Of a DNA stretch of 64,000 nucleotides, positions 1 to 55,264 are shown in pieces. The stretch's first letter is position 1, and the number at the start of each line of letters is the position of its first letter. The notes beneath the pieces are model-generated. The model had not been told where the DNA came from, ran no database searches, and saw nothing but the letters and a program-made list of their open reading frames with translations. The DNA is from Mytilus trossulus (taxonomy: Eukaryota): positions 47,306,001 to 47,370,000 of the forward strand of contig NC_086375.1 in assembly GCF_036588685.1 (NCBI RefSeq), read 5' to 3'. The position numbers were made by a program, and so were the translations under genes.

Positions 1-346
1 CAATCTGTGGTCAAATCAAGATAATTTCAAGCCCCCATCGATTATTCTTTAATGATTAGCATTTATAAAAGAGTTGTATCATATTCATTAAAGAGAGCAT
101 ATAATTTTGGTATAAGTGTATATATTTTTGCTTAGACAGTTTGTACACACAACTGCAAAATGCTGCACTGCTTTTGGCTGTGATCTAGAGTCTAAATGAT
201 TATGCTTGCAATATATAGTTTTTAAATGTAAAAAAAAAAAAAAATCCCTACCTACCTACCCAACTGCTGATGGTGTGAGTCGGCAATGCCAAACAAACAA
301 TTTTTTAAGGGTGGCCTTATACCTAATTTTCATGGTTCTAACTTAC

Positions 347-16153: not shown

Positions 16154-18145
16154 TAATTTTAACACTTTTTATCCGATACATGTCACTTAAAATTTGGTTG
16201 ACTTTTCTTTGTGACTTGATATTTAAAATTTATCTTAAATCTTCACTGTTCAATGACGCGGAAAAACCAAAATATAACGTTTATGTGTTTATTTTTTTGG
16301 TTAAAAGTAAACAACTATAAAAGCCTTAAGGAAGACCATAAAACGTATGATTTTCCGTGTTGTTCTATGCTTTTTGTTATTCACACACGATAGAAAATGA
16401 AAAATAAGTGTACAGGTTGTAATATCAACAAATGCTATTTGTGAACATAAAAATCTATTTTTTGCAAATGTATCACACCGAAACGCTAAACTATACACAC
16501 AAGAGAATCATTTAAATTTAACAGCGGGTTGTGTTAAAGCATGGAAGTAATATTTAAAGTAACTTGAAAGTCGATTTAAACTAATTTTATATGACGTATG
16601 ATTTTTTCAACAAAAGAAGTTGTGATATTTTCCTCCTTCATCTACCCGGATTTTAAATAATAACAAAGAACACCAATGCATTTTAAATTTAATGTTTTAC
16701 AGCATTTTATAATACTATTTGAGTACTTTTAAAAGACAGTGCTTGTGAGTTAATGCAATAAGACTTCTTAATTAATTTTATCACATACATATCAGTCGGA
16801 CCATTAAAGTCCATTTGGAAACTCAAGGTCGGCTTTTTATTCAAAAAGTTATATTTATGCTCATTAAATTTATATTTAATGATTAATTCTTAACTTTTAA
16901 ATATCTAATATAAAACATGTTTAGACAAAATTCAAAATTTAAGCTTAAACGTTTTGCATTAGAACTAAAATATGCCAATCTACTGTCATGGTTTCTTGGA
17001 TTACACGCATTTATCTGTTAACCTCTAATTTGTCTGCATGCAGGAACATTAACCCTCCCCTTGCATATATGTTAAGTCATCACTGCATTATACCACAAAC
17101 ATATACTTTGAACAATAAGTTTCCTAAAGATGAAATGCACAATTTTTCATACACTTTTAGGTATATAAAAAATACAAATATATTTGACATGAAGTTTTAC
17201 AACCATTGATCTTACAAAACAAGTGGTAAAACCTAAGACGGAAATTTATCTGAATTTGATTTTTTTGATAATTGTTTAAAGGAAGGCTTCTGTTACCAAT
17301 ATAATCTTTTAAGAAGGAACGGAGCATCAACAGGAAACTTGAAACGGGGTTTGATTTTCTGAAATGACATTCGGTCTTCCCCTTGTCATGCTCCTAATTG
17401 CGTCTACATATAAGTTAAGTCTTTCTCTGACTATTAAAGGCATACGATACAGTTTTGACCCCATAATAAAATGTTGGTGAACATTTGCATACATACTATT
17501 TTTTACATTATTAAATCAAATATGTAATAAAAAAATATACCATCATGTGCTAATTTTTGGGTAAATTGAGGTTCAAATTTCAGACATTTCCTCGAAATTC
17601 AAATTTTTGGACGTATTTTTCCTTCCGACAGAACTACATTACCTTTTTGTTTTAAAAGGTAAACACAAGCTTTTTTTTGTTAAAGTATTTGTATTTTGTT
17701 TTTAAAAGCTGCCATTTTGTCCATTGTAGAGAGTTTTCTCATTGGCAATACTGTCACATCTTCTTATTCTTATTGTCTTATGATTCGTACAATCATTTTG
17801 ATGGATTAACACAGGGCGTCCAATCTACTAAAATAAGATCAATACATTCTAACTATACGTCCTATTTCAGACTATCTCTTCGACAGATTCAACAGGATTT
17901 GAGATACCAATTTCCATTAAAAATAGTCGTTTTGGTATTGCGCACAGAAGATATTGTCTGCTCTTCGACTGTCTCGATAATTCAATGGCATTTTAATCGT
18001 GTTCATCATGTTTTGATTTGTGTGATCTATTCGTTTGTAGTACCTTTAGTCGGTAATAGGGAGTGGATACAGAGTACCAATATTATGAAATATTCCAATA
18101 GTCTTTTTTTTCTTGTGAATTTTCTGACCTCCTCTCAACATTAAT

Positions 18146-23322: not shown

Positions 23323-25810
23323 ATTGTCTGCAGTTTTATATTTTCTGTTTTCAAACGTTCCCATTTCTCCTTTTTTTGGACATAGTGACATACAAGCATG
23401 AACATCAACACAAAGGATAGAACGGAATATTTTTCTTTAATATAGAGGAAACCGACTAACTTGCAAATAAGCCCTCAAAAGTCTACACAATACTTTTCGT
23501 CAAAATATTTGTGTTAACCAATAGAAAAAAATCTCAGAATATATTTTGAAACGTGTTATATAACCACAATCCGTCATTGACTTAAAGACGTAGTTGTGAC
23601 ATTGTTGTGGTGAAAGACAAATATTCGTGGTCAAAGGTTATTGTGTAAAACATAACACATTTTCAGCTAGTCGGTGAGTGTAGGTCAAACGTAAGTTCAT
23701 TTTACTTGTAGTATTTACAACTAGACTTTAAGGCTCCAGCAGTTATTCGCATCTTACATTTGAAAGAAATCAAGATTTTCATAAAGCAACCATTTACATC
23801 AGTTTATCAAATAGGTATCTCTTTATATTTCCAATTGGTCAGATGATTGCACTGTATCTTTGAATTATTGTCACCCGGACCTGTCTCAAAATCGAATTAA
23901 CCATGCATTTATAATATAATCATTTATAATTTATATAATATGATTTATTATAAGAAAAATAAAACTAGTTAATGTGATGCATACTAAAATGTAGTACAAA
24001 CCTAATATTGAGCAATAGGTAAAATCACTCATGAACGCATTTATATATGTACAAAAAAATTATGCACATGTGCATACTGTGTTATTTTTTTAAGCTAACC
24101 TTTGAAATATCTCTGTTATGACTTTTGGTGTGTGAAAAGGGTTAAAAATATCAGCATTGTAAAATTGTTTTATTGATGACTACATCCACTACTGACTAGT
24201 GGATTTTTTTACAGTACAAACAATTTTATATTCATTCTCAATTTTTATAAATATTCCAAAAGCTTGTAAGAAAAGCACTCATACCATTCTATATTTGTAA
24301 TGACAAAGTTTTATTGGGTGATAATTGTGGCATGGCTTGACATCAGTAACATTGTTTCTGATGTGCATTATACTTCGAGGATAACCAAAATTGGTTATAA
24401 GCGCAGCCATCATAATATTTGTATTGTTAATTTTAAACTACCGCCACATGATAAACTTTCCATTGTGGTGATGTATAAAAGTACCCCACCGCTATGCACT
24501 GGTCATGAGAAGAACTACTACACAATATGAAACTATAATTATTGTTTATTATTTCATATCTAATTTTTTATATAGAAATCGACCTCGCTACATTGCACTA
24601 CACACTTTATAAAATGATAATACAATTGAGAATGGAAATGGGGAATGTGTCAAAGAGACAACATCCTGACCATAGCAGAAAACAGTCAATGGCCACCAAT
24701 GAGTCTTCAACACAGAAAGAATATCCCGCACCTGGATGCGGGCTTCAATATCCCATATTTCTCACATTTTATTTTATTTCTTTGTGTATTGTGTATTTTC
24801 TCTGAATACTCTGACTTAAGTATTCTTTCTCGATGCCTTACTCATTTGGAAACATAATCATAGCTTAGCAATTTCTTTGAAGTCTTTTCTTTAAAACATA
24901 AATTGTTAAGATAAGTTCAAGAGTAAATTGAGACTGTAGAGAAATGAATATGTATATAAGACAAAGGAAAGTACTGACATCACCTAAAGACAAAGGAAAC
25001 AGACAACAACAAAAGACAAAGGAAAAACTGACAACACCAAAGGACAAAGGGAAGAACAGATCAAAACAAAAACAAAAAGGAAAGAACACACAACACCAAT
25101 GCCAAACAAATTACTAACTAGTACTAATATGATGACAATACAGAATTATGTTTCAAAGTCACAATTTACTTTGTTACCTGCATCAAGTTTTTGTTTATTA
25201 CAGGGACGACTGCGGTTTTTCGAAACTGTCTGCATTGAATTAACTAACGATATGCTTGTGAAGTTGTTTCAAGATATTATCGCAAATCATGCTACTAGTA
25301 TGCAAAAAAAAAAAAAAATCAAAAATAAGGTTTTTAAAGATCTTTTACGTCCTTTAAAAAGGTTGTCCTGAGACACAGTGGTAGATTCAAAAAAAGGAGG
25401 GGGGGGGGGGGGGGGTCCGGTGGTTGGACCACACCGTTTTAACGATCATTGCATTTGATTTGAATGAGGACATATTTATATAAAAAAAAACTTTCTCTAT
25501 GATTGGCAACCCCTTTTAAAATAGCTAGATCCGCCCCTGACACACCTTAAAATAAAGTCTGATGGAAGTAAATTAGCAACATATATGGTTTATACATTGT
25601 ACATGTATGTGTTCATTATTCTGGATTTTTACGTTTACGTTAAAGTATGATACCATTCATATCATATTATTCAGCTCTTCTGTCTTAACATGCATTATCA
25701 TTGATATGATCATAATTATAAATCAACCGTTTACAAAACTTCGAACTTTACCTCATGAATAAATTACCTTAGCTGTTTTTGGCAAAACTTTTAGGAATTA
25801 TGGTCCTCAA

Positions 25811-27220
25811 TACGGGGCGCCGAATGGGACTCTTGTGGTTTTGTACAAAATTCAATTCTGTCATAACAAAATCATTTTTGTCTTACAAAACTATGTGCTA
25901 CATACTTGTTTTGTGAGAACTTCTTCAATTTTGTGATGACAAAATTCATTTGTGTAGACAAAATTCATTTTTGTCATGACAAAATTCATTTTTGTAGACA
26001 AAATTCATATTTGTCATGACAAAAGTCAATTTTGTCTAAAAGGTATGCAAATATAAACATATTTTGCATACAAAATTGACTTTTGTTACCTGATATGGAA
26101 ATTAAATCACAAAAGTCAATTGTGTGAGGTAAGATTCAAGTTTGTGAGACAAAATTGACTTTATTGAAACAAAATTAACTTTTGTGAGACAAATTTAACT
26201 TTTGTGAGACAAAATTGACTTTGGTGAGACAAAATTGACTTTTGTGAGACAAAATTCAATTATGTCAATTTTGTTGAGACAAAAGTCCATTTTGTTAATT
26301 TTGTTGAGACAAAAGTCAATTTTGTCAATTTTGTTGAGACAAAAGTCAATTTTGTTAATTTTGTTGAGACAAAAGTCAATTTGTCAATTTTGTTGAGACA
26401 AAAGTCAATTTTGTCAATTTTGTTGAGACAAAAGTCACTTTTGTGACGACAAAATTCATTTTTGTGACGACAAAATTCAATTATGTCAATTTTGTTGAGA
26501 CAAAAGTCCATTTTGTTAATTTTGTTGAGACAAAAATCAATTTTGTGGAGACAAAATTCAATTTTGTCAATTTTGTTGAGACAAAATGCAATTTTGTCAA
26601 TTTTGTTGAGACAAAATTCAATGAGACAAAATTCAATTTTGTCAATTTTGTTAAGACAAAATTCAATTTTGTCAATTTTGTCGAGACAAAAGTCAATTTT
26701 GTCTCACATTTGTCAATTTTGTCTCACAAAAGTCAATTTTGTCAATTTTGTTGATCACATTGGTCAATTTTGTTGATCACATTGGTCAATTTTGTCTCAC
26801 AAAAGTCAATTTTGTCAATTTTGTTGAGACAGAAGTCAATTTTGTCAATTTTGTTGAGACAAAAGTCAATTTTGTCAATTTTGTCTCACAAAACTCAATT
26901 TTGTGTAACAAAAGTCGATTTTGTATGCAAATTAGTTCACAGAAACCAAACTAAACTAATTTGAATACAAAATTTACTTTTGTCGCCCAATTTTCAAATT
27001 AGGTAACAAAAGTCAAGTCTGTGTAACAAAAATGAATTTTGTCATGACAAAAGTGACTTTCGTCCGATGATAGATAATTTTGTATGACAAAATTTTAAAT
27101 TTGTAGTATGATACAAATTTTGTTAAACTGAACTCATTTTTGTTGAACAAAAGTCACTTTTGTCCGTACAAAATTGAATTTTGAGTACAAAACCACAAGA
27201 GTCCCATTCGGCGCCCCGTA
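25811..27220. mobile_element. Foldback-like non-autonomous DNA element (1410 bp) with internal tandem repeats
   Basis: Perfect 36-bp TIR TACGGGGCGCCGAATGGGACTCTTGTGGTTTTGTAC. 5-bp duplication CTCAA (25806-25810, 27221-27225). Interior built from ~21- and ~31-bp units of TTTTGTTGAGACAAAAGTCAATTTTGTCAA. Confidence 0.88.
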
Positions 27221-27276
27221 CTCAATGCTCTTCAACTTCGTACTTTATTTGGCATTTTAAACTTTTTTGTATTCGA

Positions 27277-27320
27277 GCGTCAGTGATTAGTCCTTTGTAG
27301 ACGAAACGCGCGTCTGATCC
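27277..27320 (+). ncRNA. Degenerate hammerhead ribozyme in a retrozyme-like monomer (about 25690-25810 plus 27221-27360, interrupted by the foldback element)
   Basis: GCGTCA-GTGATTA-GTCCTTTGTAGAC-GAAA-CGCGCGTC-TGATCC. The core CUGAUGA is mutated at two positions and the 3' strand of stem I is damaged. Confidence 0.7.
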
Positions 27321-28314
27321 AAATGCAAAATTTCATTCCTGGTATCTATGAAGAGTTTATTGATGTATTTTTAATACTTAATTCAACCAAATGTGTTAAA
27401 AATTTTCAGCAACAAAACCAAAACGGAGGTCTGTATTAAACATATTGAAAGCTATATTGTTATTGTTAATTTTGTATTATACATTAATGTCAAACCCTGA
27501 CTACATTCCTTCCATATTTTATATACTAAAAAGTACTAGTACTAAAATGGAACTAAACCACATTTTATATGTTATGTCATGATTAAAAATATCATAAATG
27601 TGACAACATAAACATTTATTATTACAGTGGGAACATAAGTGTTTTGTGTCGATGCATCTTCAAGTGGTATAGATATTGTTAAAATATATTATGAATGTGA
27701 TATTAAATAAGTGTTACAGAGTATCATATGTATCGGACATAAGTCTTTTATCGTGGATATTCTTATTTTAAATAAGAAATCCGTGTCAGAATGAACTATA
27801 GCTTGATCCATCAGTTTCCCAAGTTAATCAAATCCACACGCCTACAATTTGGATGAGATATTGATCGTCCTTTGTCTTGATAGTGTCTTTGTTAAGTTTT
27901 CAGTTCAGATAGCCGCCACTTGACATTTTTCCAACATCTTCTCGGTGAATAAGAACTTAGTTTGTATCCGGACTTTTTATAACACTTCCGACATAAAACT
28001 TGTATAAAGTTAGTGGGATATATGTTGAAGTGACTTTGAATATAAACCGTTGTGAGACAAAACAAGCTTGCTGTTCTTAATATCTGTATAATATACGTAA
28101 CATACATTTTTATATGTTAGGACATATGCAATACTTGTGAGTCACTTTATCTAGTCTCGTTGCAAAATTAATAATAGTTATTTATCTTAATGAAACCTTG
28201 TGAGGCGTGACCGGAAAAAGTCGATCGTAACGTCATTCCAGTTATAGTTGTACTATAATTAACTGTCTTAAACAGATAGATATACAATTCAAAAATGGAG
28301 ATTTAAAACTAAAT

Positions 28315-31300: not shown

Positions 31301-34002
31301 GGAAGAGTTAATTCTTTTTCAAATGATTTTTATTGCTTGTTCTTATGTTGTACTGGTACAAAACTCTCTCAGGTTAGGGGAGGGCTGGAATCCCGCTAAC
31401 ATGTTTAACCCGGGCACTTTCTATGTGTATGTGCCTGTCCCAAGTTAGGGGCCTGTAATTTAGTGGTTGTCGTTTGTTAATGTGTTTGTTTTTCTTTCAT
31501 TTTTTTTTGTACAGAAATGAGGGCGTTAGTTTTCTCGTTTGAATTGTTTTACATTTGTCATTTCTGCTGACTATGTAAAATGGGTTTTGCTCATTGTTGA
31601 AGGCCGTACGGTGACCAAAAATTGTTAATTTCTGTGTCATTGTGTCTCTTGTGGAGAGTTGTCTCATTGGCAATCATACCACATCTCCTTTTTTTAAACT
31701 TTTCCTACGAAAAGGGGGAGGAGGGCCCCCTGGATCCGCCTATGTTAACCTACAAAGGGCACATGGAAATTTACATTTAGTAATGCGGTAGTAATAGGTA
31801 TTGAATACCTGACATCGTGTGGATACTTTCTAAGAAGAGATACTCCAAAAACCAAACATACAAGGAAGCAATTTGTAAATGATTAAATAATCTGATTTCA
31901 TCGAAGACCAAATAATACAGATTATGTGGGGTTTGAAATGTGGTCGATGAGCTACATGTATACCCAAAAGATGCAATGTGATTTAATACAGACAAATAGC
32001 AAAAATTGTCACAAACTTTTCATCTTAATAAAGGTTAAAGATCTTATCTAAATAAAAAATCTATTACACCATAATATTACCCCGGAGGGAACCTGCACTA
32101 TTAATCTTAATAGAACAATATTTTTTTGTGTGTTTTTAGTGAAAAGAGAAAATAAATCTTAAAATATTTATTGTCTGGTAAACTGATCTGTTCCTGACTT
32201 GTAAAATGATAGCAATCCTACCCGGTTAAAAAGGATCTTTTTAAAATAAATAGTTTGTAAATGACAGGCACATGTAAACAGTAGCATTCCTTTCATTTAT
32301 AACGTGTCAAATTATAAGGTGCACTTCAAGTAAAAGACCAGGTAATATACATATACATAAATTCATACACACTCCCACAGTAAAAATGAAATTGACCCTT
32401 TGACTTGACTTGAATGAAAATGCTTCAAATTCAGATATTGCTTTAGTTAAACTCTACTTTTACATCTTATATGCATGAATGGGAAGAAATTATGAAGTCT
32501 TTTCAAATTATTACGTAAACAATGAGAGGTGAATCATTCTTTGCATTAAGTGATATAATTTAACTTATAAATGATTTAAAATGCACCCTATTTGGAATTC
32601 GTATTACACAAGGAAGGACAAGGTTAAATAAATTCGACCTCTACGGTTTTGAGTGTTTCACAATCGGGTGCATTATATTTGTTTATATAATCATTGTATT
32701 ATGATGTTTTTGTATTTTGCCTGACAAGGACCCATGATTGGAAAAATAAAATAATGTCTAATGTCTAATGTCTATTTGTGTGCATTAACCCCATAGTAAT
32801 TACAGAATTTTATCTTTGATTTAACCATCTGAACTACAGTCTTCAGCAACATTGTAAAACACACAGGCACTTGTCTCAGCCGTTGTCTTTTTTTCTGAGA
32901 CAAGTGCCTGTGGTAAAACACCCTTATCAAGTGTTTATTTACTATTTTTGTTGATGTATACACATAGATATTATTGATATGTACAGGATTCAATACTTGA
33001 TAATTTTATATTTTAGTAAACATTCACACTCACAATGGACAAGAAAAAATGCAGGTCTCAGATACAGCAGGCCAAGTAAGTAGTGGATAAAATAACATTT
33101 TCAAACCAAAGTACTTCAGAAATGTGTCATATGAAGACCTACAACGGATTGACTGCAGAACACCAAAAAAAGGAAAAGAAAAAAAAGAGACTCCATCCTT
33201 CTACACAGCGATTCCTTTGATTAACATTGCTCATTCAGTTCTGTTGATACTTCTCATTGAAAACTAGGGAATTCAAACCATTACAATTGCTACTGAAATA
33301 AGGGAAAATAAAGCAAGAGACACAAAGAAAAGAGAACGCCAATATAAAAAAATGAACATATATATCCAAAGAAACACAACATTTTACATCTTGTAAGTTC
33401 CAAATCAAGAAATATAAATTTGAACATAAAAAACTCAATTATGAGCATTATGATATTAATGAACAGTTATTTTTTCTTATTTCCTTATAAACAAGCCTGT
33501 AGCAAATTGAAGTAGGTGATTCACATTAGCTGCAATGATTGTGATCAGTGAACAGTAAACAGGAAATGTTTTAAAGATGATTTTGTTGTTTTTCCAGGAA
33601 ACGTACGACCGACTACGGACATTATCGTATTATGACACGGATGTATTTATCGTCTGCTTTTCTGTGGAGGATAAAGACTCATTAGAAAATGTCAAAACAA
33701 AATGGATTCCAGAGATTAAAGAATTCCGACCCAATACCCCATTTATTCTCGTAGGGACACAAACTGATTTACGTGGTTCAGTGACAGATATCACAGACGC
33801 TTGTATTAAAACTACAAAAGGAAAGAAACTAGCTAAGAAATTTGGTGCTGTAGACTATTTAGAATGTAGTGCACTAGAATTAAATGGAATGGACGAAATA
33901 TTTAGTGTTGCATATCATGCTGCAGTAACTCCTAAAAAGAAACGACGGGTATGGAAGAGTCTCAAAAGTGCTTTCAAACGAAAATCTGTTGCAGAAAAAT
34001 GA
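28315..34002 (+). CDS. Rho-family small GTPase, Cdc42/RhoU/V-like, lacking CAAX, 201 aa; exons 28315-28456, 33017-33075, 33598-34002
   Basis: GT-AG junctions in frame (606 nt). [13 protein letters not shown] (G1), YEPTCFDDY (switch I), [16 protein letters not shown] (G3/switch II), GTQTDLR (G4), YLECSAL (G5). Confidence 0.9.
29260..30090. repeat. 29-bp minisatellite (about 28 copies) in intron 1 of the first Rho gene
   Basis: Unit is approximately GTATCTGGTCAGAAATCTTAGGTTTATAA, for example starting at 29381 and 29410. Confidence 0.9.
31150..31695 (-). repeat. Long copy of interspersed repeat family A
   Basis: Ends ...GAGAGTTGTCTCATTGGCAATCATACCACATCT, the reverse complement of the head at 39053 and 51218. 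Confidence 0.75.
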
Positions 34003-35768: not shown

Positions 35769-35931
35769 TGGCAAAACTTTTAGTAATTTTGGTCCTCAAT
35801 GCTCTTCAACTTCGTACTTTATTTGGCCTTTTTAACTTTTTTTGATTCGAGCGTCACTGATGAGTCTTTTGTAGACGAAACGCGCGTCTGGCGTATATCA
35901 AAAAATTAGTCCTGGTATCTATGACGAGTTT
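35769..35931 (+). mobile_element. Partial solo retrozyme-like monomer
   Basis: Reverse complement of 43245-43415 at high identity; contains an intact hammerhead. Confidence 0.8.
35851..35894 (+). ncRNA. Type I hammerhead ribozyme (intact core); predicted cleavage after C35888
   Basis: GCGUCA-CUGAUGA-GUCU(UUUGU)AGAC-GAA-ACGCGCGU-C/UGGCGU. Stem I has 6 bp (two G-U), stem II has 4 bp, stem III is palindromic, and the cleavage triplet is GUC. Confidence 0.88.
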
Positions 35932-36663
35932 ATCTACTATGTTTTCATCGGGCACATATTGCTCCTCATTGAAAATGTGTGATACATTGACTGCTTGTGG
36001 TTCTCTTTAATATTTAGGTTACGAACCTTAATTGGTGGTACCTGTAGAAAACTGATTTCAAAGGGATAGCACATCCTTATATTTGTTTTTTACCAAGCCC
36101 GAATATTTGGAAACAATGACGTCTTTACCCTTAAACTATTGGATGTTGCATATGTACTTATTAACATGTTGTTGGCTTTGTGCTTGCTGTCAGTAACTGC
36201 GAGTACTCTCAGATCTATACTTAATGTCTTATTATTGTGGGAATGTATAAGTACACTGCCACGTCGACTCTGTATTTTTTGGTAGATGTATTCCTGTTTG
36301 AATCCATCTGATGATTTAAGTCCCTTTCAAACGATTTTCATACTTTGCTCCACTGTTCCAGTTTATGAGAGGGTTGGGCTCTCGCCACCTTTAAAAAACC
36401 CCCACTTGGTACGATTAGGAATAAAAGTTGTTAGATCATAAAATAATAACCAATGACATAAACAAGATATATATATTAGAGCACCTGAATTTGATCCGAT
36501 TTTTAAAAAGTTCCTGTTGCTCAAATTTTACTTTTCTTATAATGTTGATGGACTGTTTTTTTTAATTTTTTTTGACATTGTTATCAATGTTCTGTTTTCT
36601 CTCCTTCGTCGAATTATGAATTTGATTGCCTTTGCTATTTCATTTTGTAACCATGTATGAAAT

Positions 36664-38101
36664 GTACCAACTAATTGATGGGGAACTTTTTATCCAAAGA
36701 ATACTCCTGACAAATTATATTTCTTTCCGTCTTGTTAATCGTATTTGTTGTAATAACGTTTTGAATACCTTAGAGTAAATATGTTGTGAAAACTACTTAT
36801 TGAAAGTGCCTAGCGGCTTCTAAGAAAGAGAAACACAGGATCAATAGATATAAATTATTTAAATATTTAAAGAAGTTTTCTATATCTATGTCTCAATACA
36901 AAACACAAGAGAGAGATATTATATCTTTTGTATAGCAAAGTTTAAATCAGACACCATGTTTAATTTTTACGACACACGCTCATAACACCAATATGAACAT
37001 ACATGTACTAGTATCAAAGATAAAAACCTTCTCGGTCGAAGACAAACCATTACACCATGAAAAAAAACCCCACTTCATTAACTAGATACTTCCTAATTTG
37101 TACCCTTCTAATACCAAGGGATTCTCAGCTGCTGTGGAAGGGTAGACAGATCCTGCTCAACATGTGGCATTCATCGCGTTGCTCATGGCGAGCATACGTT
37201 TGGAGAAACACATTATATGTTGGCTATGTTGGTGTCACAATCGAAAGAAAGAGGACCGGACTGTATGGCTACGACAACTGGAACATATCGGTGGTCACCT
37301 TTGACGATTATTCCACGTGAAAGACTGCGATATTTTACATCATCGCTCAAATGTAGATTGCGAAAATAGCATTACAACATAAGTACCAACTAATTGATGG
37401 GGAACTTTTTATCCAAAGAATACTCCTGACAAATTATATTTCTTTCCGTCTTGTTAATCGTATTTGTTGTAATAACGTTTTGAATACCTTAGAGTAAATA
37501 TGTTGTGAAAACTACTTATTGAAAGTGCCTAGCGGCTTCTAAGAAAGAGAAACACAGGATCAATAGATATAAATTATTTAAATATTTAAAGAAGTTTTCT
37601 ATATCTATGTCTCAATACAAAACACAAGAGAGAGATATTATATCTTTTGTATAGCAAAGTTTAAATCAGACACCATGTTTAATTTTTACGACACACGCTC
37701 ACAACACCAATATGAACATACATGTACTAGTATCAAAGATAAAAACCTTCTCGGTCGAAGACAAACCATTACACCATGAAAAAAACCCCCACTTCATTAA
37801 CTAGATACTTCGTAATTTGTACCCTTCTAATACCAAGGGATTCTCAGCTGCTGTGGAAGGGTAGACAGATCCTGCTCAACATGTGGCATTCATCGCGTTG
37901 CTCATGGCGAGCATACGTTTGGAGAAACACATTATTTGTTGGCTATGTTGGTGTCACAATCGAAAGAAAGAGGACCGGATTGTATGGCTACGACAACTGG
38001 AACATATCGGTGGTCACCTTTGACGATTATTCCACGTGAAAGACTGCGATATTTTACATCATCGCTCAAATGTAGATTGCGAAAATAGCATTACAACATA
38101 A
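36664..38101. repeat. Near-perfect 719-bp tandem duplication (36664-37382 and 37383-38101)
   Basis: Identical text at offset 719, including twin ORFs at 37057 and 37776. About 5 substitutions seen by eye. Confidence 0.95.
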
Positions 38102-42600: not shown

Positions 42601-43285
42601 TCAAGTTGAATGCTATCAACCAACGATGTCCTGCTGCATCCGACTTTGAGGTGGTCAAAACATAGGTTACTCGATTGTTGTTAGTGAGGACTGTGAAACT
42701 AATGACCGTAAATAAAGTTCTTGAACTTGTCGCAGATGTCCCACTTGAGTGCAAGGAATTCTCTCTTATGTGGTGGGTAGGAATACGATTTGTCAATGGC
42801 CTACTGATCTAACTAAAATCTTTCTAAATCTTCTGTAGTATTTTACGAAACCCTAAAACTACGTACATCATCCGGCGTTGTTGGTTGAGGTCAGTTAACT
42901 ACTTGGTCTGTATTGTGTTGGTCCCTCTTCAGATACTCTATGACAAATGTAATTTACCTTCCTTTAAAAAAATTACACTTACTTTGACTCTTTGATAACC
43001 TGAAACACAAGCTGTAAATGTTCCAGTGCTCTTCGAATGTCTTTCAAAAAATGATAATGTTGTCAAGAAATATGCAACAGATCTTATATTACCGGGCTTG
43101 TATTTCCTATCACGATTTCCTTGATAGAGAATTGCTGCTCACAAGGAAGCTTTTAACCAAGAGTTCCAAATAATGAAGTTGAAATCAGCCCTTCATCAAT
43201 TTTACGAACGCCATCACGAGTTGATTGACCGTTATTGAATAATAAAATAAACTCATCATAGATACCAGGACTAAATTTTGTACAT

Positions 43286-43329
43286 ACGCCAGACGCGCGT
43301 TTCGTCTACAAAAGACTCATCAGTGACGC
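43286..43329 (-). ncRNA. Type I hammerhead ribozyme (intact); predicted cleavage between 43292 and 43291
   Basis: The reverse complement is identical to the 35851-35894 motif. Confidence 0.88.
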
Positions 43330-43649
43330 TCGAATCCAAAAAAGTTAAAAAGGCCAAATAAAGTACGAAGTTGAAGAGCGTTGAGAACCAACATTCCTAA
43401 AAGTGTTGCCAAATCCAGCTAAGCTATTATATGCCTAAGGTAGAAAAGCCTTAGTATTTCAAAAATTCTAATTTTTTTAAACAGTTAATTTATAAATATA
43501 ACCATATCAATGATAATTCATTTCAGCACAAAAAGTGCTGACTACTGGGCTGGTGATACCCTCGGGGAAATAAATCTCCACCAGCAGTGGCATCGACCCA
43601 GTGGTTGTGACTTAACTAATCATACATACAAAAACTTAATTGTGTACAT

Positions 43650-43693
43650 ACGCCAGGCGCGCGTTTAGACCACAAAAGACTCATCAGTGACGC
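43650..43693 (-). ncRNA. Mutated hammerhead ribozyme (probably inactive)
   Basis: CUGAUGA is retained, but GAAA has become UAAA, stem II is weakened and the cleavage triplet GUC has become GCC. Confidence 0.7.
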
Positions 43694-44013
43694 TCGAATC
43701 CAAAAAAGTTATAAAGGCCAAATAAAGTACGAACATGAAGAGCATTGAGGACCAAAATTCCTAAAAGTTTTGCCAAATCCAGCGAAGCTATTATATGCCT
43801 GAGGTAGAAAAGCCTTAGTATTTCAAAAATTCTAAATTTTGTAAACAGTTAATTTATAAATATAACCATATCAATGATAATTCATGTCAGCACAAAAAGT
43901 GCTGACTACTGGGCTGGTGATACCCTCGGGGAAATAAATCTCCACCAGCAGTGGCATCGACACAGTGGTTGTAAATAAACTCATCATAGATACCAGGACT
44001 AAATTTTGTACAT

Positions 44014-44051
44014 ACGCCAGACGCGCGTTTCGTCTACAAAAGACTCATCAG
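44014..44051 (-). ncRNA. Hammerhead ribozyme truncated at the insertion boundary (5' strand of stem I missing)
   Basis: CUGAUGA, stem II, GAAA and CGCGCGUC/UGGCGU are intact, but the upstream GCGUCA is replaced by host sequence. Confidence 0.75.
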
Positions 44052-47000: not shown

Positions 47001-50000
47001 ATTTCACAATTTAAAATGCATCCTATCGCCTTTCAATGACAGGTCATCTATGAACCACTCATACAGGTTTTTTAAATGTTCGTAAATGTCTTAAGAGTGT
47101 GACACTATCCATACACGAAAATTAGTCCACAATTTGACCAAACGTTACAGCGTATTTATACATCCTGAGGCAAAGCCAAACTGACGTCTTTGTTTATGTT
47201 TGTTTGCCAGATTACAGTTGCCTAATTAACCATCTTATACCCTAGCTTACCATTGGGGCTTTGTATGATTGTTACAGACATTCGCCATAAACATGTCTTT
47301 GCTTATTAGGGCAAATGCCTCCTACTGCCACTAGCATGTACACTAAGTTTACATATATCATTATTTGCTTTATGAATAAATAACAATATAGGTCGATGAG
47401 ATAAAGCGTAAAACAAACGCATGTTCGATAGGAGATGTCAATATGATAATGTAAATTTGTCTAGAATTTCATTTATTTAGATAAATTTTCAACTTTTATT
47501 CTCTGCAAACATATGTATATACCTGTGAGGAAAGTTAAATAATGACAGAAGATTTAATTAAAAAGTAAATATGAAAAATAAAATTGCATTTTACAACAAG
47601 TAATAAGTATGTTAAGAATTTCTCGATTTAATCCAAACATTAAGAATTATTCTTAAAGCTTCGTGGATTTATCTGGCGTTCATTATTATGAACAAACATC
47701 AGGCCGTCATGTTTTCAAGTTTGATTTTTTTTACGTTTGTCATTTCGGGACTTTCAATAGCATGGATTTTGCTCATTGTAGAAGGTCGTACGGTGCAATA
47801 TAGTCGTCAATTTCTGTTTCGTGGAGAGTTGTCTCGTTGGCAATCGTACTATTATATCTTCTTATTTTCATATTCGCATAGGTATGGGTATTTTGTTGTT
47901 TTATTTGTGTTTTTGTTTCCAGTCTCATTGACCATCACAGAACTACTTTCAGTCATTCTATATTAGTGTAAAACATCCGTGTAACGATGTCAGTATTCAG
48001 ATCACTTATAACATGTTGTGGAGACTAATATAGCGATTGACTAAGAGAAATATTAATATGATTCCTCGAAAAACGGTTTTTAATAAAAAAAAAAAAAAGA
48101 AAAAAAAAAAAAAAAGAAGATGTATAACCTGGAATTGTGTTAGTCGGTCGGTTATCAGGTGGATGATTTTAAGGATAACACCAAATTGTTTTTGTAGAGA
48201 TTATATTAAATTGAGGTCACAAGTCCAAAAAGTATTGAACACCATATTTGTCTAAGATACAAGTGTCAAGGCAGATATTTGAAAACTAGCTTAGTCAAAA
48301 TATTTGATTTGATGAAATATTTGATTTGTAAACAAAATTTAACCCATGATAGATAGTCATTTTTTTAAAAACCACGACTTATAACGGACGTTTTTATAAA
48401 TACGTATAAATTGTCACAGTACATTTAGAAACAAAAATAATAAATTGAACTTCATTAAAGCAAAGATTGTCTCATGAGTTTGATGTAATCCTTTAAAGAC
48501 TTTTTTTTTTAAAGTTTTGCTCCCAATGTATTTTTCTTTAAAAGTTTTGCTTTCAATGTAATATACCTCATATGATTTTCCAACTGTTGACTGCAAAGTA
48601 GATTTTGGGCTTAATTGTGTCCATGAATTAGTTGTTTTTCAACGTAAATGCGTAGCACTTCATACTACTAATGTGCACACGGTGAACGCTTTCACAACCC
48701 ATGATTACATTTATATTATACAACCACAAAATAAAAATTATATGAGTTTCACTTTTTTTCTATGCATTGTTGTGATGTTGTCATGGGAAGCACATGCAGC
48801 CATGCATATTGAATTTTATTGAGAAATAAAATTTGTATTTCGAATTACTCGCGATTGTTGTCATTCAATGAAAAGCACGGATACAATGCTTAATAAATAT
48901 ACACATAATATTAGGCAAAGTTGACCTTACAAGATTTTTACCGTTCTGCATATTGTTTTTCCTGCAAAGAAATGTTTATTTTGTTAGCCACTTCATTTTT
49001 TTTTTTATCTAGAGCATTCCTCTAGGCGGTTGATCTACAATAAAACATTACGTTTGTTCTTTTCTGATAGTCATAACACTCAACACATATAGTCAACCCG
49101 TAAAACAATTTTCGTCCGTGTAAATATATTTTTTTTGTAAACGCCAAAGCATTGGTATCTGAATTTGATTGATATAACGAAGTTAGTTTCAGGAGATGTT
49201 TTATGAATTTCACTGTTACTGTTTAGCCTAGTTTTGGTGGTATCCATTTGACTTGGCTTTGTATTTATACATCCAATAATTGTGTCATTGTTCTGTAACA
49301 GTTTTTGTATACTTGGCTTTCATTTTTGCTAATATACTTTGTCTATATGCCTTTTTGTTTGTTTCTTTGTTACATATGGCGTGGTTCTGTACTTATATAT
49401 CCCGTCATTGTGTTATTGTGCCATGGAAAAACGTTTGTTTACATGATTGTTGGTTTTTAAAGTGATTAAGATAATAACACAATGTTGACTGCTGTATTCC
49501 TATTTTTGACATTTTCACCTGTTATGTCTGTTTGTTTTGTTCACACATCGTTGTCCATATACTGAAATATAATGACATTGTCGTACACGTGAGAGGTTTA
49601 GCTATCTATAAAATCAGGTTAAATCCACAATTTTCTACCTAAGAAAATGCCCGTAGTAATCTAAAAATATGACAGTTGTCCATTCGTTTAATGTGTTTGA
49701 GCGTTTGATTTTGCCATTTGCATAAATATCTCTCTCTTTCTTGGAGAAATAAATGAAATAGAGTTTTAAACATGTTTAAAGACATCCGAAATCGTAGAAT
49801 GATTGAATCTCAATGTATGGTCAGATTTGTAGTAGATAACACTTTTCTCTGTTTTGCCGACAACACTATACTTTTATAATAATAAGGTAATCATTCTATG
49901 AAACGTAATTTTTATTAAAACAAAACAATTAACAAAAGGTATTAAATAATAACGTATTTACACGCATGGAAGACATTGCTTACGTATATATGTGCACAAT

Positions 50001-50257: not shown

Positions 50258-53200
50258 TTACAATATTGTACATGACTGCATTTCCATCCTGTCCCCCTGT
50301 GGGATTAAAACGGATGAAATAGCCTTGTTAATAACCTGTTTCACTTTCCTCTCCATGTGTGGAGCACATTCAACATAACAAGCATAATCTGTACGTTTTG
50401 ACAAAGCGTATCCCTCATTTTGAGATACGGGCTTCAAACCTCTGTTTTGAAGTTGTTTTATCACTGCTGGGTTTTCGCGTAAATCAGTTTGGGTTGCCAC
50501 CAACACAAAAGGGATATCACCCATGAAGTTTCGGATTCTCGGTAGCCATTTTTCTTTCACATTTTTAAAAGATTGAGGTTGCACCGCTGAATAGCAAACT
50601 ACGAAAACATCGGCGTCTGAACATATAGTCTGTATTGTGGCTGTAGAAGTTTCCTGTCCAATATAAGATATATATTTAAATTAACAAGGGATTTACATAT
50701 TTAGTTTTTTTTTGTAGACGGGTTATTTCAATCAAATTGTACTTGTTTCCACTTGTCTGCAAATCTTAAAATAATACTTTATGGTTCTTGTTATAGTTTT
50801 GATTATAAGAATTTATTGATGTTTTTATAAAGATCGATTGTTTGTTTTGTAACATCCAGTTGCAGAATGGTCCTGCATAAAAGAATGCTGGACGCAACCA
50901 ATGTATCAATACATTTAAAAGAGGTTCATTTTACGATTTTACAGAGTTTTGAATAAGGATTAGATAAGACTACCAATGAGACAACTATACACCAAAGTTC
51001 AAATAAAGTGGATGTTAAAATTATAGGCAACGGTATGATTTTCAACAATGAAAAAAAAACCAAGTATAACGTATATGTTTTGATAACAGGCGCTGACATG
51101 AAAATTATGAAACATTGCAATTGAGAAAACCAACGGACTAATTTATCACTAAACATTTAAACAAATATGGCTTGGGACAAGCACAAAAAATATAAGGAGG
51201 TGCTAATATAAAAAAAGAAGATGTGGTATGATTGCCAATGAGACAACTATCCACAAAAGACCAAATGACACAAACATTAACAATTATAGGTCACCGTACG
51301 GCCTTCAACAATGAGCAAAGCCCATACCGCATATAGTCAGCTATAAAAGGCCCCGATAAGACAATGTAAAACAATTCAAGCGAGAAAACTAACGGCCTTA
51401 TTTATGTAAAAAAATGAACGAAAAACAAATATGTAACACATAAACAAACGACAACGACTGAATTACAGGATCCTGACTTGGAACAGGCACATACATAAAT
51501 AATGTGGCGGGGTTAAACATGTTAGCGGGATCCCAACCCTAACCTGGGACAGTGGTATAACAGTACAACATAAGAACGAACTATAAAAATCAGTTGAAAA
51601 AGGCTTAACTCATCAGATAGACAAAAAATAAAAGTGGACGTGGCCGGGTAAACATGATTGTGAGCTTTCAACCCTCCAATAACCTGAGACAGTAGTGTAT
51701 TAGCACAGCATCAGATCGATACAAGGAAAATACCAAGCAAAACACAGACAGGAAGTGGCAGGCTATACTGTGAATTCATTTATTTTCGTGGGTATCAATT
51801 TTCGTGGATTGAAAAAAAACTTGCTTTTCGTGGATATTTGATTTCGTGGTTTTGCCAATCTCTGCATACAAAGCCTACAGAAAATTTGCAATTCGTTGAA
51901 TATTTCATCACTTATCCCTTACAACAAAAAGACACCAATTACATATCTGAGGGGGCTCGTTTTTCAAAAGGTTTGGAAGTAAAATACTTTGAGGTTTACT
52001 TACTGTTTGGCAATAAGCATCCGCTTGTTAGGTGCTTGTTAGCGAAAGAGGTGATCTAAACAGAATTTGTTATATTTGAAATAAGGTATAATAGCGGAGT
52101 ATTGAAATTGAAATGCCTTTAAGGTTTTGACAACACATACATTATACGGAATTTCAATAATTGACAGCTTGTTGTTTAACTGATAATATTTAAAACAATT
52201 TCCTGTTGTTAACCTTGTAGATATCGTTTAACGGTTTTTATTTTAATTTGTACTTGTACTTTAACGGTACTTTTTTTTTTATATTTTAGCAGCAAACATT
52301 TGTAAAAACAGGTGTGACATAATTGCATGATTAGCCCGTCCCTTGCAATCGTTAAGAAATTTGTGGAATATTTGAAGATTAAAAGTCCAATAATTTTGAA
52401 ACGAGACAAGTGAAAATCTCAAAAACGAGTACAGATCACCATTGCAATTCTTTTGAATTGAAGTGCATCGCTCAAAGTATAGTGTCAGGTCTTTCTATGT
52501 TGGTATGTTATACTTCTGTGTCAGAAAAGGTAGAAGGTGTGGTACCATTAAAACGTTTCGTCCCGCTGCGCTTTGCACCTGTTCTAAGTCAGGAATGCAA
52601 AACAGGTGAATACTTCTTAAAGAAGTATACGGAACATAAGACCCCATTTTTTTCCATAATTTTGTAAAAGCTTGAAGTATAACAAGAAATGTAGTATCTT
52701 AGACTTTAGATTGTTTCTTCACGTCTTACCATTTAAAAAAAAATCATAATCTAGAATAGAAAGTTGTATTAATTGTTTTATCTACATGTCTGTCAAAGAT
52801 TTTATTTACATGGAGCCATCCAGAACTTAATGAACTGAAGACCATGTGTGTGGTCACAAGAAATGAAATGTAGATGTAAGGGGTTAGCTTTATTGCCTGT
52901 TTACCCTTATGTATATGTTTGTGTGGGTTGGAGATTTTACTAACACATGTAATTTGTTTTGGAAAGTAGTGAATGTAGTTTTGTTTTGTTTTCAAAAGTA
53001 AAGATGGAATGGTGTAAAGACAACATTACTGAGGCTTTCAAATACTTTATGCAGGGTATTGTACGATGTCGGGAGACTGTTGTCGTGGGTTAATAAAATT
53101 GAGAATGGAAATGGGGAATGTGTCAAAGAGACAACAACCCGACCAAATAAAAAAACAACAGCAGAAGGTCACCAACAGGTCTTCAATGTAGCGAGAAATA

Positions 53201-55264
53201 CCCGCACCCGGAGTATAATGTCTGTTTTTAACGTAAATTAGACTGTTTGTTGTCTTCATATTTTTTTTTATTAAACTCAGAAACAGTTTAAAGCATACTT
53301 TACGACATGGGTTTTGCTCATTGTTGAAGGCCGATATATAGTTTTTTATTATCTTGTCTGTTAGTCTCTGGTGAATAGTTATCCCATTGGCAATCATACC
53401 AAATCAGAGTATTTAAAAAAAAAAAAAAAAAAGAACTCAGGTTATTCAATTAGATAAGTCTAAAATTTAAATTTGATCTCAGTGACCAAGTGTAAAAAAA
53501 CTGAGCACCCTCCCCCAAAATTTTAAGTTGAAACAATATATATCGTGACTTTCCGAGTCTGTAACTTTGTGTATATTATTTAAAAATTAGATCTACACTT
53601 GATCTACACTTCTTGAGGACATGAAATATTTTAAGTACGTGTTGACAATAGCTTATAAACAATAAACTTCAAAAGATGAAACCAATAAAAGAGATCGTAC
53701 CTAGTGTCAACATTAATTGATCTATATACAATAAAATGACTTAAATAGGGTTATTTTGAACTATTAATATTAATGTCAAACATAGGAAGTAAAGATAATA
53801 ATTCGGACTAGAACATTGTTTGTTTGTCAATGTTCAGGTAAAATCACAAATTTTGATTGATATATGTAGTTAGGTAAATTAAAATTTCGAGTTTAGTTGG
53901 CTATATTTCTGATGTAACGATGAAGGTATTTCAAGGACGTGCAGATAACCTCATATTTCAGGTGTGGTATGTAAAAGGGCTAATATTGTATAGATAATGT
54001 AAAAATAAACTCATCATAGATAACTAAAAATGAAAGTTCTAACTTGAAAATAAATATCTATGTTTTACCTGTTCTAAAGTATCCAGTAACTGCATCTGTC
54101 TTTGTTTTCCTGACAAAGATATTACACCTGAAAATAATAAAAGATTTATAAGCGTTATACTTACATTTGTATACTAAACATAGTTCCTTGTTATATGAAT
54201 CCAGTTTTCGATTCCTCTGATTGGTTGAGGTCATTAGTAAAATACTAAAGTTTATTTATATAATTTGGAGTTCAAGTGTTACGTCCATTTTCGCTGAACT
54301 AGTAAACTTTTTTTATGCATGGACCATCTAAAGCCTTTTGGAACAAGATTGTTCCGCTGTTTTAAAGACCAATTGGTGGTCTTCATCTGTTTTCTGCTCT
54401 TTGGTTGTGTTGTTGTCCCTTTGAAACGTTCTCAGTTTCCATTTTTCATTCTATTTGAATCTTTCAGATACCTAATTTAGATTTTTACAAAAAAACACGT
54501 CTCGTAAGCAATGAAATTAATTGTCCAAGATTAGTATTACATGGTATGATTGTATCATAGTGCTCCAACCACAACATGTCTTATACTTCCAAAAATAATT
54601 GCTGATTCAGCGTAGTTTTATCGAGATCCAAATCCCAACAATACAGAAAGAACAATTGAACGTGTAAACATGAAAAAATATTTACGACAAATAACTGATT
54701 TCTAGTTGTACATTAAGAGTGCAATCATACATTAAGAGTGCCCGATTCTCACACCTAACCTTATCGCAATGATGTCTTCGATCTAATTTTATGCTCCATC
54801 AAAACTCCGAAAAAAAATTAACTGGTTTGTAGTGTTATAAGTAAATAGACATAAGAACAACTTGTTCCCCACCCCCACGAATAAATAAATTAAAAATCTC
54901 CAAAACACAAGACATCATTGAAACCTACTTTACAGTATATTAGATATATATTCAAAGCATATGTATGTTATGGTATACTTTAAGAGAAATACTATAGATG
55001 TTACTAATTGGTCCGTTTCCGTGAAAACAAACCGCATTTATCGTTTTCTATCCTTTTAATTTAAGTATTCAAATTGAAGAAAAAATCAAACGGACAGAAG
55101 TTTTTTTTCTATAGAAATGTTCACTTACCAGCATAGTTGTCAAAGGCAGACGGGACACAGTTAGTGGGGAATCTTTTTGTAGCATAACTAACAAGCATAC
55201 TAGTTTTCCCCACACAATCATCTCCAACTACTACACATTTAATATAATTAGCAGGTACCACCAT
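50258..55264 (-). CDS. Atypical Rho-family (Cdc42-like) GTPase with degenerate catalytic motifs and a CAAX box, 196 aa; exons 55264-55129, 54127-54069, 50653-50258
   Basis: GT-AG junctions in frame (591 nt): [87 protein letters not shown]...VATQTDLR...YVECAP...CTIL*. Exons 1 and 2 are missing from the ORF track. Confidence 0.88.
51216..51650 (+). repeat. Well-preserved copy of interspersed repeat family A (intron 2 of the second Rho gene)
   Basis: AAGAAGATGTGGTATGATTGCCAATGAGACAAC head. Further fragments at about 8270-8420, 12730-12970, 36180-36400, 40320-40520, 47730-47870, 50970-51190, 53306-53400 and 63370-63640. Confidence 0.8.

What the first reader, a model, noticed from the sequence alone, without database searches (positions are those of the whole stretch)
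43243..44050. 364-bp tandem repeat carrying type I hammerhead ribozymes: a retrozyme / circular-RNA system
On the minus strand each unit has GCGUCA-CUGAUGA-GUCU(UUUGU)AGAC-GAA-ACGCGCGU-C/UGGCGU at an exact 364-nt period, with no ORF. The unit also has strong internal pairing: TCAGCAC/GTGCTGA at 43523-43541, GCTGGTG/CACCAGC, and ACTACTGGG/CCCAGTGGT at 43541-43605. A >2-unit array that starts and ends mid-unit between short duplications fits rolling reverse transcription of a small circular RNA, whose transcripts self-cleave to monomers and recircularise. Dispersed copies at about 27277 and 35851 show mobility. Non-LTR retrozymes of similar size have been described in mussels, so the class is known; this length variant and locus may not be.
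Basis: partly seen in the sequence, partly recalled or inferred. Interest (0 to 1): 0.85.

Follow-up and report, generated by a model that had tools for sequence, protein, structure and literature searches.

The report
Decayed copy of known mussel retrozyme
This is one ordinary, partly decayed copy of an already published mussel mobile element (a 364-base non-coding repeat carrying a self-cutting hammerhead ribozyme that makes small circular RNAs); the genome holds many thousands of such copies, and their ends look like those of a Penelope-like retrotransposon of the Naiad type.

Summary
The tandem repeat is real: 43245-44051, period 364, 2.2 units. The minus strand carries type I hammerhead motifs. 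Only one of the three is whole (43329-43286, predicted cut 43292|43291). The middle one has core mutations, and the 5'-most one lacks its helix I strand. This locus therefore cannot release a monomer by double cleavage.

The element belongs to a published family. Its 44-nt ribozyme is identical to the cloned Mytilus galloprovincialis retrozyme Mg353 (Cervera & de la Peña 2020). That clone self-cleaves in vitro, and its family gives abundant circular RNA. The 364-nt length is the majority length of the main subfamily here, inside the published 350-390 range, so it is not a new length variant.

This scan holds 285 notes with the words hammerhead and retrozyme; the eight listed all lie on other DNA of this genome.

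Beyond the papers read:
- Insertions share a fixed 3' end 47 nt past the cut.
- They show a steep 5'-truncation gradient: exact 21-mer counts 6,710, 5,785 and 1,065.
- The unit's 3' terminus and the covarying stem-loop after it match the ends of a Naiad-type Penelope-like element in this genome.

RNA evidence could not be obtained. Verdict: already known, low interest.

The parts
43245..44051 (-). Whole insertion: 2.2 tandem units of the 364-nt retrozyme, subfamily A. It starts at unit position 286 and ends at the family's fixed 3' terminus (unit position 364). GC is 37%.
   Evidence: TRF; BLAST of the unit on the window; end positions; GC
43245..43608 (-). Unit 3, full length, 96.7% identical to the family majority sequence
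43609..43972 (-). Unit 2, full length, 93.7% identical to the majority. Fifteen private substitutions are packed into its last 63 nt (43609-43671).
43973..44051 (-). Unit 1, a 5'-truncated 79-nt piece, 100% identical to the matching part of unit 3
   Evidence: the repeat finder family D11
43286..43329 (-). Complete type I hammerhead. Helix I is GCGUCA/UGGCGU, the core is CUGAUGA, helix II is GUCU/AGAC with loop UUUGU, then GAAA, then the palindromic helix III stretch ACGCGCGU. It is the commonest (modal) ribozyme sequence among the sampled sites (both subfamilies). The predicted cut is after C 43292.
   Evidence: Rfam RF00163, 32.5 bits, E 6.8e-6; commonest of 79 distinct sites; identical to clone Mg353
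43650..43693 (-). Mutated hammerhead of unit 2: helix II broken, GAAA to UAAA, GUC to GCC. Predicted inactive.
44014..44051 (-). Hammerhead at the 5' edge of the insertion. Core and helices II and III are intact, but the 5' strand of helix I is missing. Predicted inactive in cis.
   Evidence: Rfam partial match to model positions 7-39; 3 of 6 helix I pairs
43544..43602 (-). Conserved imperfect stem-loop that begins a few bases after the family's insertion terminus (unit positions 7-65). It is homologous to the stem-loop at the 5' start of a Naiad-type element. A second copy lies in unit 2 at 43908-43966.
   Evidence: fold z -3.3; compensatory pairs; nhmmer and fold comparison
43523..43541 (-). 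Hairpin UCAGCAC-UUUUU-GUGCUGA (unit positions 68-86)
35769..35933 (+). Solo 5'-truncated copy (unit positions 198-362, 96.4% to the majority) with an intact hammerhead at 35851-35894. It shares the 3' terminus.
27218..27361 (+). Older solo 5'-truncated copy (unit positions 221-363, 89.5%) with a degenerate hammerhead at about 27277-27320. It shares the 3' terminus.
54003..54022 (-). 20-nt exact match to the last 20 nt of the unit. It is probably an extremely 5'-truncated insertion.

Best explanation
The array is one partly decayed insertion of the published Mytilus non-LTR retrozyme, the subfamily whose loop 2 reads UUUUGUA.

Shown in the literature for the family: tandem units are transcribed, the type I hammerhead cuts each unit, and the monomers accumulate as circular RNA.

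Shown here: new DNA copies always end at one fixed position, 47 nt downstream of the cut (...GAUGAGUUUAUUU). They extend a variable distance upstream, usually less than one unit and sometimes more than one.

Inferred: a reverse transcriptase starts at that fixed internal site. It copies a template that is continuous across the cut, either the religated circle, an uncleaved concatemer, or cut monomers joined by template jumping. The most likely enzyme comes from a Naiad-type Penelope-like element (N-terminal GIY-YIG endonuclease, C-terminal reverse transcriptase), because the retrozyme unit has the same end organisation as that element.

The window copy has one working ribozyme out of three. 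A transcript through it would be cut once and could not yield a 364-nt circle. It is a dead-end copy, not a source locus.
For: Anatomy.

Family identity:
- The 44-nt ribozyme is identical to clone 'Rtz Genom mussel Mg353', and the flanks read by eye are about 95% the same.
- The paper reports about 5,000 motifs, 350-390 bp repeats, in vitro self-cleavage at about 0.1 per min and abundant circRNA.

Census in this genome, with the reversed-pattern control at 0 in every case:
- 18,787 exact intact cores.
- 6,710 exact copies of the subfamily-A 21-nt tail, of which only 719 run on into a next unit.
- 5,785 copies of a 21-mer 53-73 nt from the end and 1,065 of one 317-337 nt from the end. This is a 5'-truncation gradient. 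About 86% of copies are retained across the cut.
- In 18 sampled insertions, 16 end at unit positions 362-364, and their starts spread from 64 to 344.
- Subfamily B behaves the same way.

Naiad link:
- A profile of retrozyme monomers hits six copies of one PLE family at the same place, E 2e-5 to 7e-4.
- The fold is the same. Three of seven outer-stem pairs changed on both sides (CUGGG/CCCAG against CCAAG/CUUGG).
- Seven independent fragments of Naiad-like elements in unrelated loci stop at one point...GUGAUUUUACUUUUU. In tandem copies the stem-loop follows directly, as in the retrozyme.
- Full-length homologues have GIY-YIG at about aa 130-270 and RVT_1 at about aa 630-900.
Against: - No RNA data could be obtained for this genome.
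- The intact motif scores 1.5 bits below Rfam's gathering threshold.
- Target-site duplications are weak or absent at this locus.
The terminus is inferred from fragments.
- The six PLE hits are copies of one family, so they are not independent.
- The PLE copies sampled show no hammerhead of their own, and Naiads are reported to lack them. The origin of the ribozyme is therefore unexplained.
- Exact 21-mer counts ignore different decay rates. The ribozyme 21-mer holds two CpGs.
Confidence: 0.9

Rival explanations
1. The array and its relatives are plain satellite DNA. It would have grown by unequal crossing-over or replication slippage, and the ribozyme motif would be a passenger. No retrotransposition would be involved.
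For: Some arrays are long and show higher-order periodicity, for example 4-unit repeats on scaffold 3 and runs of more than 40 units on scaffold 1. Local amplification therefore does happen after insertion. The 2026 preprint also proposes local amplification of such repeats.
Against: Thousands of dispersed copies share one exact 3' terminus and show a 5'-truncation gradient. Most are shorter than one unit. Slippage or crossing-over does not produce that pattern.
Confidence: 0.03
2. The copies are not an independent 364-nt element. They would be the 3' ends (pseudo-LTRs) of a longer Penelope-like element, left behind by 5' truncation.
For: PLE insertions are mostly 5'-truncated and leave terminal fragments. 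The unit's ends resemble Naiad ends.
Against: Whenever a copy reaches unit position 1, the sequence upstream is the tail of another unit, never a coding body. All sampled insertions show this. Genome-wide there are 719 exact tail-to-unit junctions against 1,065 exact copies of a 21-mer near the unit start. That is close to the ratio expected once the 7 extra letters of the junction pattern are allowed for. Nothing longer than 52 aa is open in the array.
Confidence: 0.04
3. The family and the enzyme are as in the best explanation, but the template is not a circle. It would be linear RNA, either uncleaved multimeric transcripts or cut monomers joined by reverse-transcriptase template jumping. 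That is how autonomous PLEs, which are not circular, also form partial tandems.
For: Naiad and other PLEs give partial tandems from linear RNA. Tandem PLE copies about 4.28 kb apart occur here. Units within one retrozyme insertion are not identical, at 87-98%. In the window array the middle unit differs from its two identical neighbours.
Against: Circles are the dominant RNA form in mussel tissue according to the paper. About 86% of copies are retained across the cut, which would need very efficient jumping. Sequence alone cannot separate the two templates.
Confidence: 0.3

Closest known systems
Mytilus galloprovincialis non-LTR retrozyme (Cervera & de la Peña, Nucleic Acids Res 2020, PMC7229834; clone Mg353, HHR families A and B)
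   Same: The 44-nt type I hammerhead is identical. The neighbouring sequence is about 95% identical where compared by eye. Unit length lies in the 350-390 bp range. There is no ORF and GC is low (37%). Two subfamilies differ mainly in loop 2, as published.
   Different: Nothing of substance for the element. This assembly holds far more intact motifs (18,787 exact cores) than the roughly 5,000 found in the 2016 draft. The window copy is decayed. The species may be another Mytilus: a transposon protein is 99% identical to an M. trossulus entry.
Naiad clade of Penelope-like elements (Craig, Yushenova, Rodriguez & Arkhipova, Mol Biol Evol 2021, PMC8557442)
   Same: High 5' truncation, partial tandems and extra bases at junctions. 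A similar U-rich 3' terminus is followed, in tandem copies, by a homologous covarying stem-loop.
   Different: The retrozyme is 364 nt, codes for nothing and carries a canonical hammerhead. Naiads are 3.4-4.4 kb, encode endonuclease plus reverse transcriptase and are reported to lack canonical hammerheads. Outside the terminus, the stem-loop and one 29-nt stretch there is no similarity.
Vertebrate non-LTR retrozymes related to PLE pseudo-LTRs (Li, Clavereau & Pollet, bioRxiv 2026, 10.64898/2026.07.22.740005)
   Same: The idea is the same: retrozymes are non-autonomous relatives of PLE terminal regions.
   Different: That work shows homology in Xenopus and states that other organisms were not examined. 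Here the related element has the N-terminal endonuclease architecture.
Newt satellite 2 and Schistosoma Sm-alpha hammerhead repeats; PLE-associated minimal hammerheads
   Same: Type I hammerhead with a very short helix III. Its palindromic sequence (ACGCGCGU) could pair between two ribozymes. This is read from the sequence, and the comparison rests on general knowledge of these families.
   Different: The repeat sequences are unrelated. The mussel ribozyme is reported to cleave as a single motif at about 0.1 per min.

Membership tests
Hammerhead ribozyme type I (Rfam RF00163) | Conserved core CUGANGA ... GAAA ... UH at the cleavage site | tested here: met
   43329-43286 reads CUGAUGA, GAAA and GUC. 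The middle copy fails (UAAA, GCC). The edge copy keeps the core.
Hammerhead ribozyme type I (Rfam RF00163) | Three helices with helix I open (5' and 3' ends in helix I) | tested here: met
   Helix I has 6 pairs (GCGUCA/UGGCGU), helix II has 4 pairs (GUCU/AGAC) and helix III is short and palindromic. The Rfam alignment covers the full model 1-45.
Hammerhead ribozyme type I (Rfam RF00163) | Score at or above the curated gathering threshold (34 bits) | tested here: inconclusive
   32.5 bits, E 6.8e-6, on 1.3 kb, and no hit at gathering level on the window. Sister copies with other loop 2 sequences score 34.8-40.9 bits.
Hammerhead ribozyme type I (Rfam RF00163) | Self-cleavage | not testable with these tools
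   Published for a clone with the identical 44-nt motif.
Metazoan non-LTR retrozyme | Short tandem repeat (150-450 bp) with a type I hammerhead per unit | tested here: met
   Period 364. The motif is present in each unit, but only one of three is intact at this locus.
Metazoan non-LTR retrozyme | Non-coding, no LTR, low GC | tested here: met
   No ORF over 52 aa and GC 37%. No terminal repeats other than the units themselves. PBS and PPT motifs were not searched for.
Metazoan non-LTR retrozyme | Many dispersed copies in the genome | tested here: met
   6,710 exact tails, mostly at separate loci, and 18,787 exact cores.
Metazoan non-LTR retrozyme | Expressed as linear and circular monomeric RNA | not testable with these tools
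Published for M. galloprovincialis.
Metazoan non-LTR retrozyme | Sequence homology to the published Mytilus clones | tested here: met
   Ribozyme 44 of 44 identical and 112 of 118 flanking letters identical, by eye.
Non-autonomous derivative of a Naiad-clade PLE | Shares terminal sequences or structures with the autonomous element | tested here: met
   nhmmer E 2e-5 to 7e-4 at the same site in six copies. Three double compensatory changes in the outer stem. The terminus motif is similar. The six copies belong to one family.
Non-autonomous derivative of a Naiad-clade PLE | The partner has the permuted domain order (N-terminal GIY-YIG, C-terminal RT) | tested here: met
   GIY-YIG lies at aa 179-271 of the partial ORF. 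Full-length homologues have GIY-YIG at about 130-270 and RVT_1 at about 630-900.
Non-autonomous derivative of a Naiad-clade PLE | Mobilised by that element's enzymes | not testable with these tools
   Inference only.

The most novel reading that the evidence does not exclude
Mussel hammerhead retrozymes are non-autonomous relatives of Naiad-clade Penelope-like elements, a clade described as lacking hammerheads. They keep the Naiad-type U-rich 3' terminus and the covarying 5' stem-loop that follows it in tandem copies. Reverse transcription starts at that fixed terminus, 47 nt downstream of the ribozyme cut. A cut monomer therefore carries the start site at the wrong end, and only religation into a circle (or an uncleaved or jumped template) can give a full copy. 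That would give the circle a mechanical role in transposition.
Probability: 0.45. Interest if true: 0.5.

Novelty: already known. Interest (0 to 1): 0.2.

Why it matters
As a finding it matters little. The element, its ribozyme, its size class and its circular RNA were published in 2020 for a sister mussel, and this copy is a decaying one.

The side results may help people who study how retrozymes move. A chromosome-scale mussel genome shows a single fixed 3' end, a LINE-like truncation gradient and end homology to a Naiad-type element. This turns the statement that 'PLEs are a strong candidate' into a specific pairing that can be tested in an invertebrate. The 2026 preprint left invertebrates open.

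Tried and rejected
- Apparent pile-up of array starts at the cleavage site (unit position about 315) in the own-genome table. My own BLAST on the loci showed this is an artefact of the tool's 50-nt scoring flank. I withdrew the idea.
- The 29-nt match between the subfamily-B tail and L070:550-578 as the PLE terminus: rejected. 404 of 470 genomic copies of that motif continue into the same downstream sequence, so it is internal to the PLE's repeated leader.
- The sequence just after that 29-nt motif does not fold better than shuffles (z -0.3 and +0.3). The homologous stem-loop lies 400 nt further on.
- C-terminal-endonuclease PLE family as partner: its 3' end lies in (TA)n and is unrelated to the retrozyme tail.
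- Rfam scan of ten PLE loci found no hammerhead except a retrozyme-B fragment near one copy. The microRNA hits are long inverted repeats.
- L066:2928-3052 looked like a PLE-linked ribozyme. It is better read as an old retrozyme fragment beside a truncated PLE.
- Pfam and PDB sequence searches on the partial PLE ORF did not reach the RT domain.
- Search for a sibling of the mutated middle unit: none found.
- A computed alignment with clone Mg353 was left out because it would have required typing a long sequence.
- A majority sequence of the non-coding repeat was used only inside scripts, as a yardstick for divergence. It is not reproduced here.

Full report
**Observation**

Tandem Repeats Finder reports one array at 43245-44051 with period 364, 2.2 copies, 90% matches and no indels. 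Read on the minus strand, the array holds three hammerhead-like motifs 364 nt apart.

Rfam's type I hammerhead model matches 43329-43286 over its full length at 32.5 bits, E 6.8e-6. This is 1.5 bits below the gathering score. It matches 44051-44020 only over model positions 7-39. Nothing reaches gathering level on the whole window.

The 25-nt core pattern, allowing three mismatches, occurs five times in the window and never in 100 shuffles. Three matches lie in the array and two on the plus strand at 27283 and 35857.

The three motifs differ in state:
- The complete motif has helix I GCGUCA/UGGCGU, core CUGAUGA, helix II GUCU/AGAC with loop UUUGU, then GAAA, the palindromic stretch ACGCGCGU, and a cut predicted after C 43292.
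- The middle motif is mutated in helix II, in GAAA (now UAAA) and at the cleavage triplet (GCC).
- The 5'-most motif sits at the very edge of the insertion, and flanking DNA replaces its helix I strand.

No ORF above 52 aa overlaps the array, and GC is 37%.

**What it is**

The window belongs to a 1.30-Gb assembly with 14 large scaffolds. A transposon protein from it is 99% identical to a Mytilus trossulus entry.

Cervera and de la Peña (2020, PMC7229834) described non-LTR retrozymes in Mytilus galloprovincialis. They reported:
- about 5,000 type I hammerheads in two families;
- repeats of 350-390 bp;
- co-transcriptional self-cleavage of a cloned copy at about 0.1 per min;
- circular RNA at high levels in several tissues.

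Their supplementary table prints the cloned genomic copy Mg353. Its ribozyme is letter for letter the 44 nt at 43329-43286. In the 118 nt after the cut that I compared by eye with the majority sequence of this genome's copies, 112 letters agree.

The majority length of full units in my sample is 364 nt. Units bounded by two intact ribozymes measure 349-381 nt in this subfamily. In a second subfamily, about 80% identical with loop 2 UUAUAUA and variants, they measure 353-358 nt. These correspond to the published families A and B. The window element is therefore a member of a published family, and its length is the ordinary one.

**Census**

Pattern searches of the whole assembly return complete counts. 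The same patterns read backwards gave 0 in every case.

| Pattern | Exact copies |
|---|---|
| Intact ribozyme core, any 7-nt loop | 18,787 |
| Last 21 nt of the subfamily-A unit (tail) | 6,710 |
| Tail continuing into a next unit | 719 |
| 21-mer inside the ribozyme, 53-73 nt from the end | 5,785 |
| 21-mer 317-337 nt from the end | 1,065 |

- Among the first 100 listed tail copies, nearly all lie at separate loci.
- Among distinct ribozyme regions in my loci, 28 of 52 keep an intact core and helix II. The rest carry point mutations.
- Conservation along the unit is nearly flat, at 0.95-0.97.

This is what a recently active, neutrally decaying family would look like.

**Insertion architecture**

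In 18 sampled subfamily-A insertions, 16 end at unit positions 362-364 (...GATGAGTTTATT(T)). Their starts spread from position 64 to 344, and lengths run from 1.07 to more than 8 units. Subfamily B ends at the homologous point.

All three copies in the window follow the rule, and a 20-nt exact tail at 54003-54022 is probably an extreme case.

An apparent pile-up of starts at the cleavage site proved to be an artefact of that tool's 50-nt scoring flank.

There is no poly(A). Target duplications are variable and often separated from the element by 5-19 extra bases. At the window locus they are not beyond chance.

Two things follow:
- The fixed end lies 47 nt downstream of the cut, so it is not an RNA end made by the ribozyme.
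- The counts show that about 86% of copies run through the cut without a step.

The template was therefore continuous across the cut. It was a religated circle, an uncleaved concatemer, or cut monomers bridged by template jumping. Sequence alone cannot tell these apart.

**Which enzyme**

The genome holds many Penelope-like elements.

One family has a C-terminal endonuclease. Its 3' end lies in (TA)n and is unrelated to the retrozyme tail.

The other family has the GIY-YIG domain near the N-terminus. Full-length homologues place GIY-YIG at about aa 130-270 and the reverse transcriptase at about aa 630-900. This is the permuted order that defines the Naiad/Chlamys clade.

I tested this as follows:
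- A profile built from 25 retrozyme monomers hits six copies of this family at one place, E 2e-5 to 7e-4.
- The folds match, and three of the seven outer-stem pairs are changed on both sides. The PLE version carries an extra 24-nt hairpin.
- Seven independent fragments of Naiad-like elements in unrelated loci all stop within 14 nt of one point...GTGATTTTACTTTTT. In tandem copies the stem-loop follows directly.
- The retrozyme junction reads ...GATGAGTTTATTT followed by the homologous stem-loop.

The retrozyme stem-loop itself folds well (z -3.3). It shows compensatory changes between subfamilies A and B.

A further 29-nt match between the subfamily-B tail and the PLE leader is internal to the PLE, not its terminus.

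I could not fetch complete PLE copies, so the PLE terminus is inferred from fragments. The six profile hits belong to one family. A 2026 preprint shows homology between retrozymes and PLE pseudo-LTRs in Xenopus and leaves other organisms open. Neither paper I read mentions the fixed terminus or the truncation gradient.

**This locus**

The three units share four differences from the majority sequence, so they come from one source.
- The 79-nt first unit is identical to the matching part of the third.
- The middle unit carries 15 private substitutions in its last 63 nt, which destroy its ribozyme.
- No other copy in the genome shares that patch.

I have no explanation for the patch.

With one competent ribozyme, the locus cannot release a monomer. 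The solo copy at 35769-35933 has an intact ribozyme but is a single fragment. The copy at 27218-27361 is older and degenerate.

**Limits**

Expression and circularity rest on the paper, which used a sister species.

The scan holds 285 notes with the words hammerhead and retrozyme; the eight listed all lie in this genome, and two of them are follow-up reports that reached similar readings on other families.

**Verdict**

This is a known element and an ordinary copy. The end-homology and terminus results are a modest addition.

Noticed in passing
window 2025-5723 (+): A 1,232-aa open frame with an endonuclease/exonuclease/phosphatase domain, a reverse transcriptase and RNase H. It looks like a LINE-type retrotransposon with a long open frame.
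   Followed up: partly
window 14699-16165 (-) and 33577-34002 (+): A 488-aa open frame with a rhodopsin-family 7TM receptor domain, and a 141-aa open frame with a Ras-family domain (Pfam). The retrozyme array lies between the latter and the Rho-like gene noted by another reader at 50258-55264.
   Followed up: no
window 43609-43671 (-): A cluster of 15 private substitutions in 63 nt of the middle unit, against 4 in its other 300 nt. They are not CpG-type, and there is no donor copy elsewhere in the assembly.
   Followed up: partly
window 49479-49720 (+): A stretch 71% similar to the leader/terminal region of the Naiad-type element (L070:696-934). It is probably an old fragment of a related element.
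   Followed up: no
window 36664-36963 and 37383-37682: Two 300-bp direct repeats, 100% identical and 719 bp apart (repeat finder family D5).
   Followed up: no
window 25844-27205, next to the solo copy at 27218: A dense field of 20-, 30- and 60-bp tandem repeats built on the motif TTTTGT..GACAAAA. A weak (70%) match to unit positions 65-228 lies just upstream at 25668-25810.
   Followed up: no
L069, L070, L074 positions about 40-700 (Naiad-type element leader): The region upstream of the PLE open frame is itself made of tandem, partly diverged repeats of about 230-305 nt. Each carries a 29-nt stretch about 90% identical to the subfamily-B retrozyme tail.
   Followed up: partly
L085 about 20-61 (-): A minimal hammerhead-like motif with a palindromic helix III (AUCCGGAU) and a UA cleavage triplet, of the kind reported for Penelope-like elements. 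It was found by a loose pattern only, and Rfam did not report it.
   Followed up: no
scaffold 1, 113-119 kb and 269-285 kb of the assembly: Near one end of scaffold 1 there are runs of about 15, 13 and more than 40 units of a 354-355-bp retrozyme subfamily with nearly identical ribozymes.
   Followed up: no
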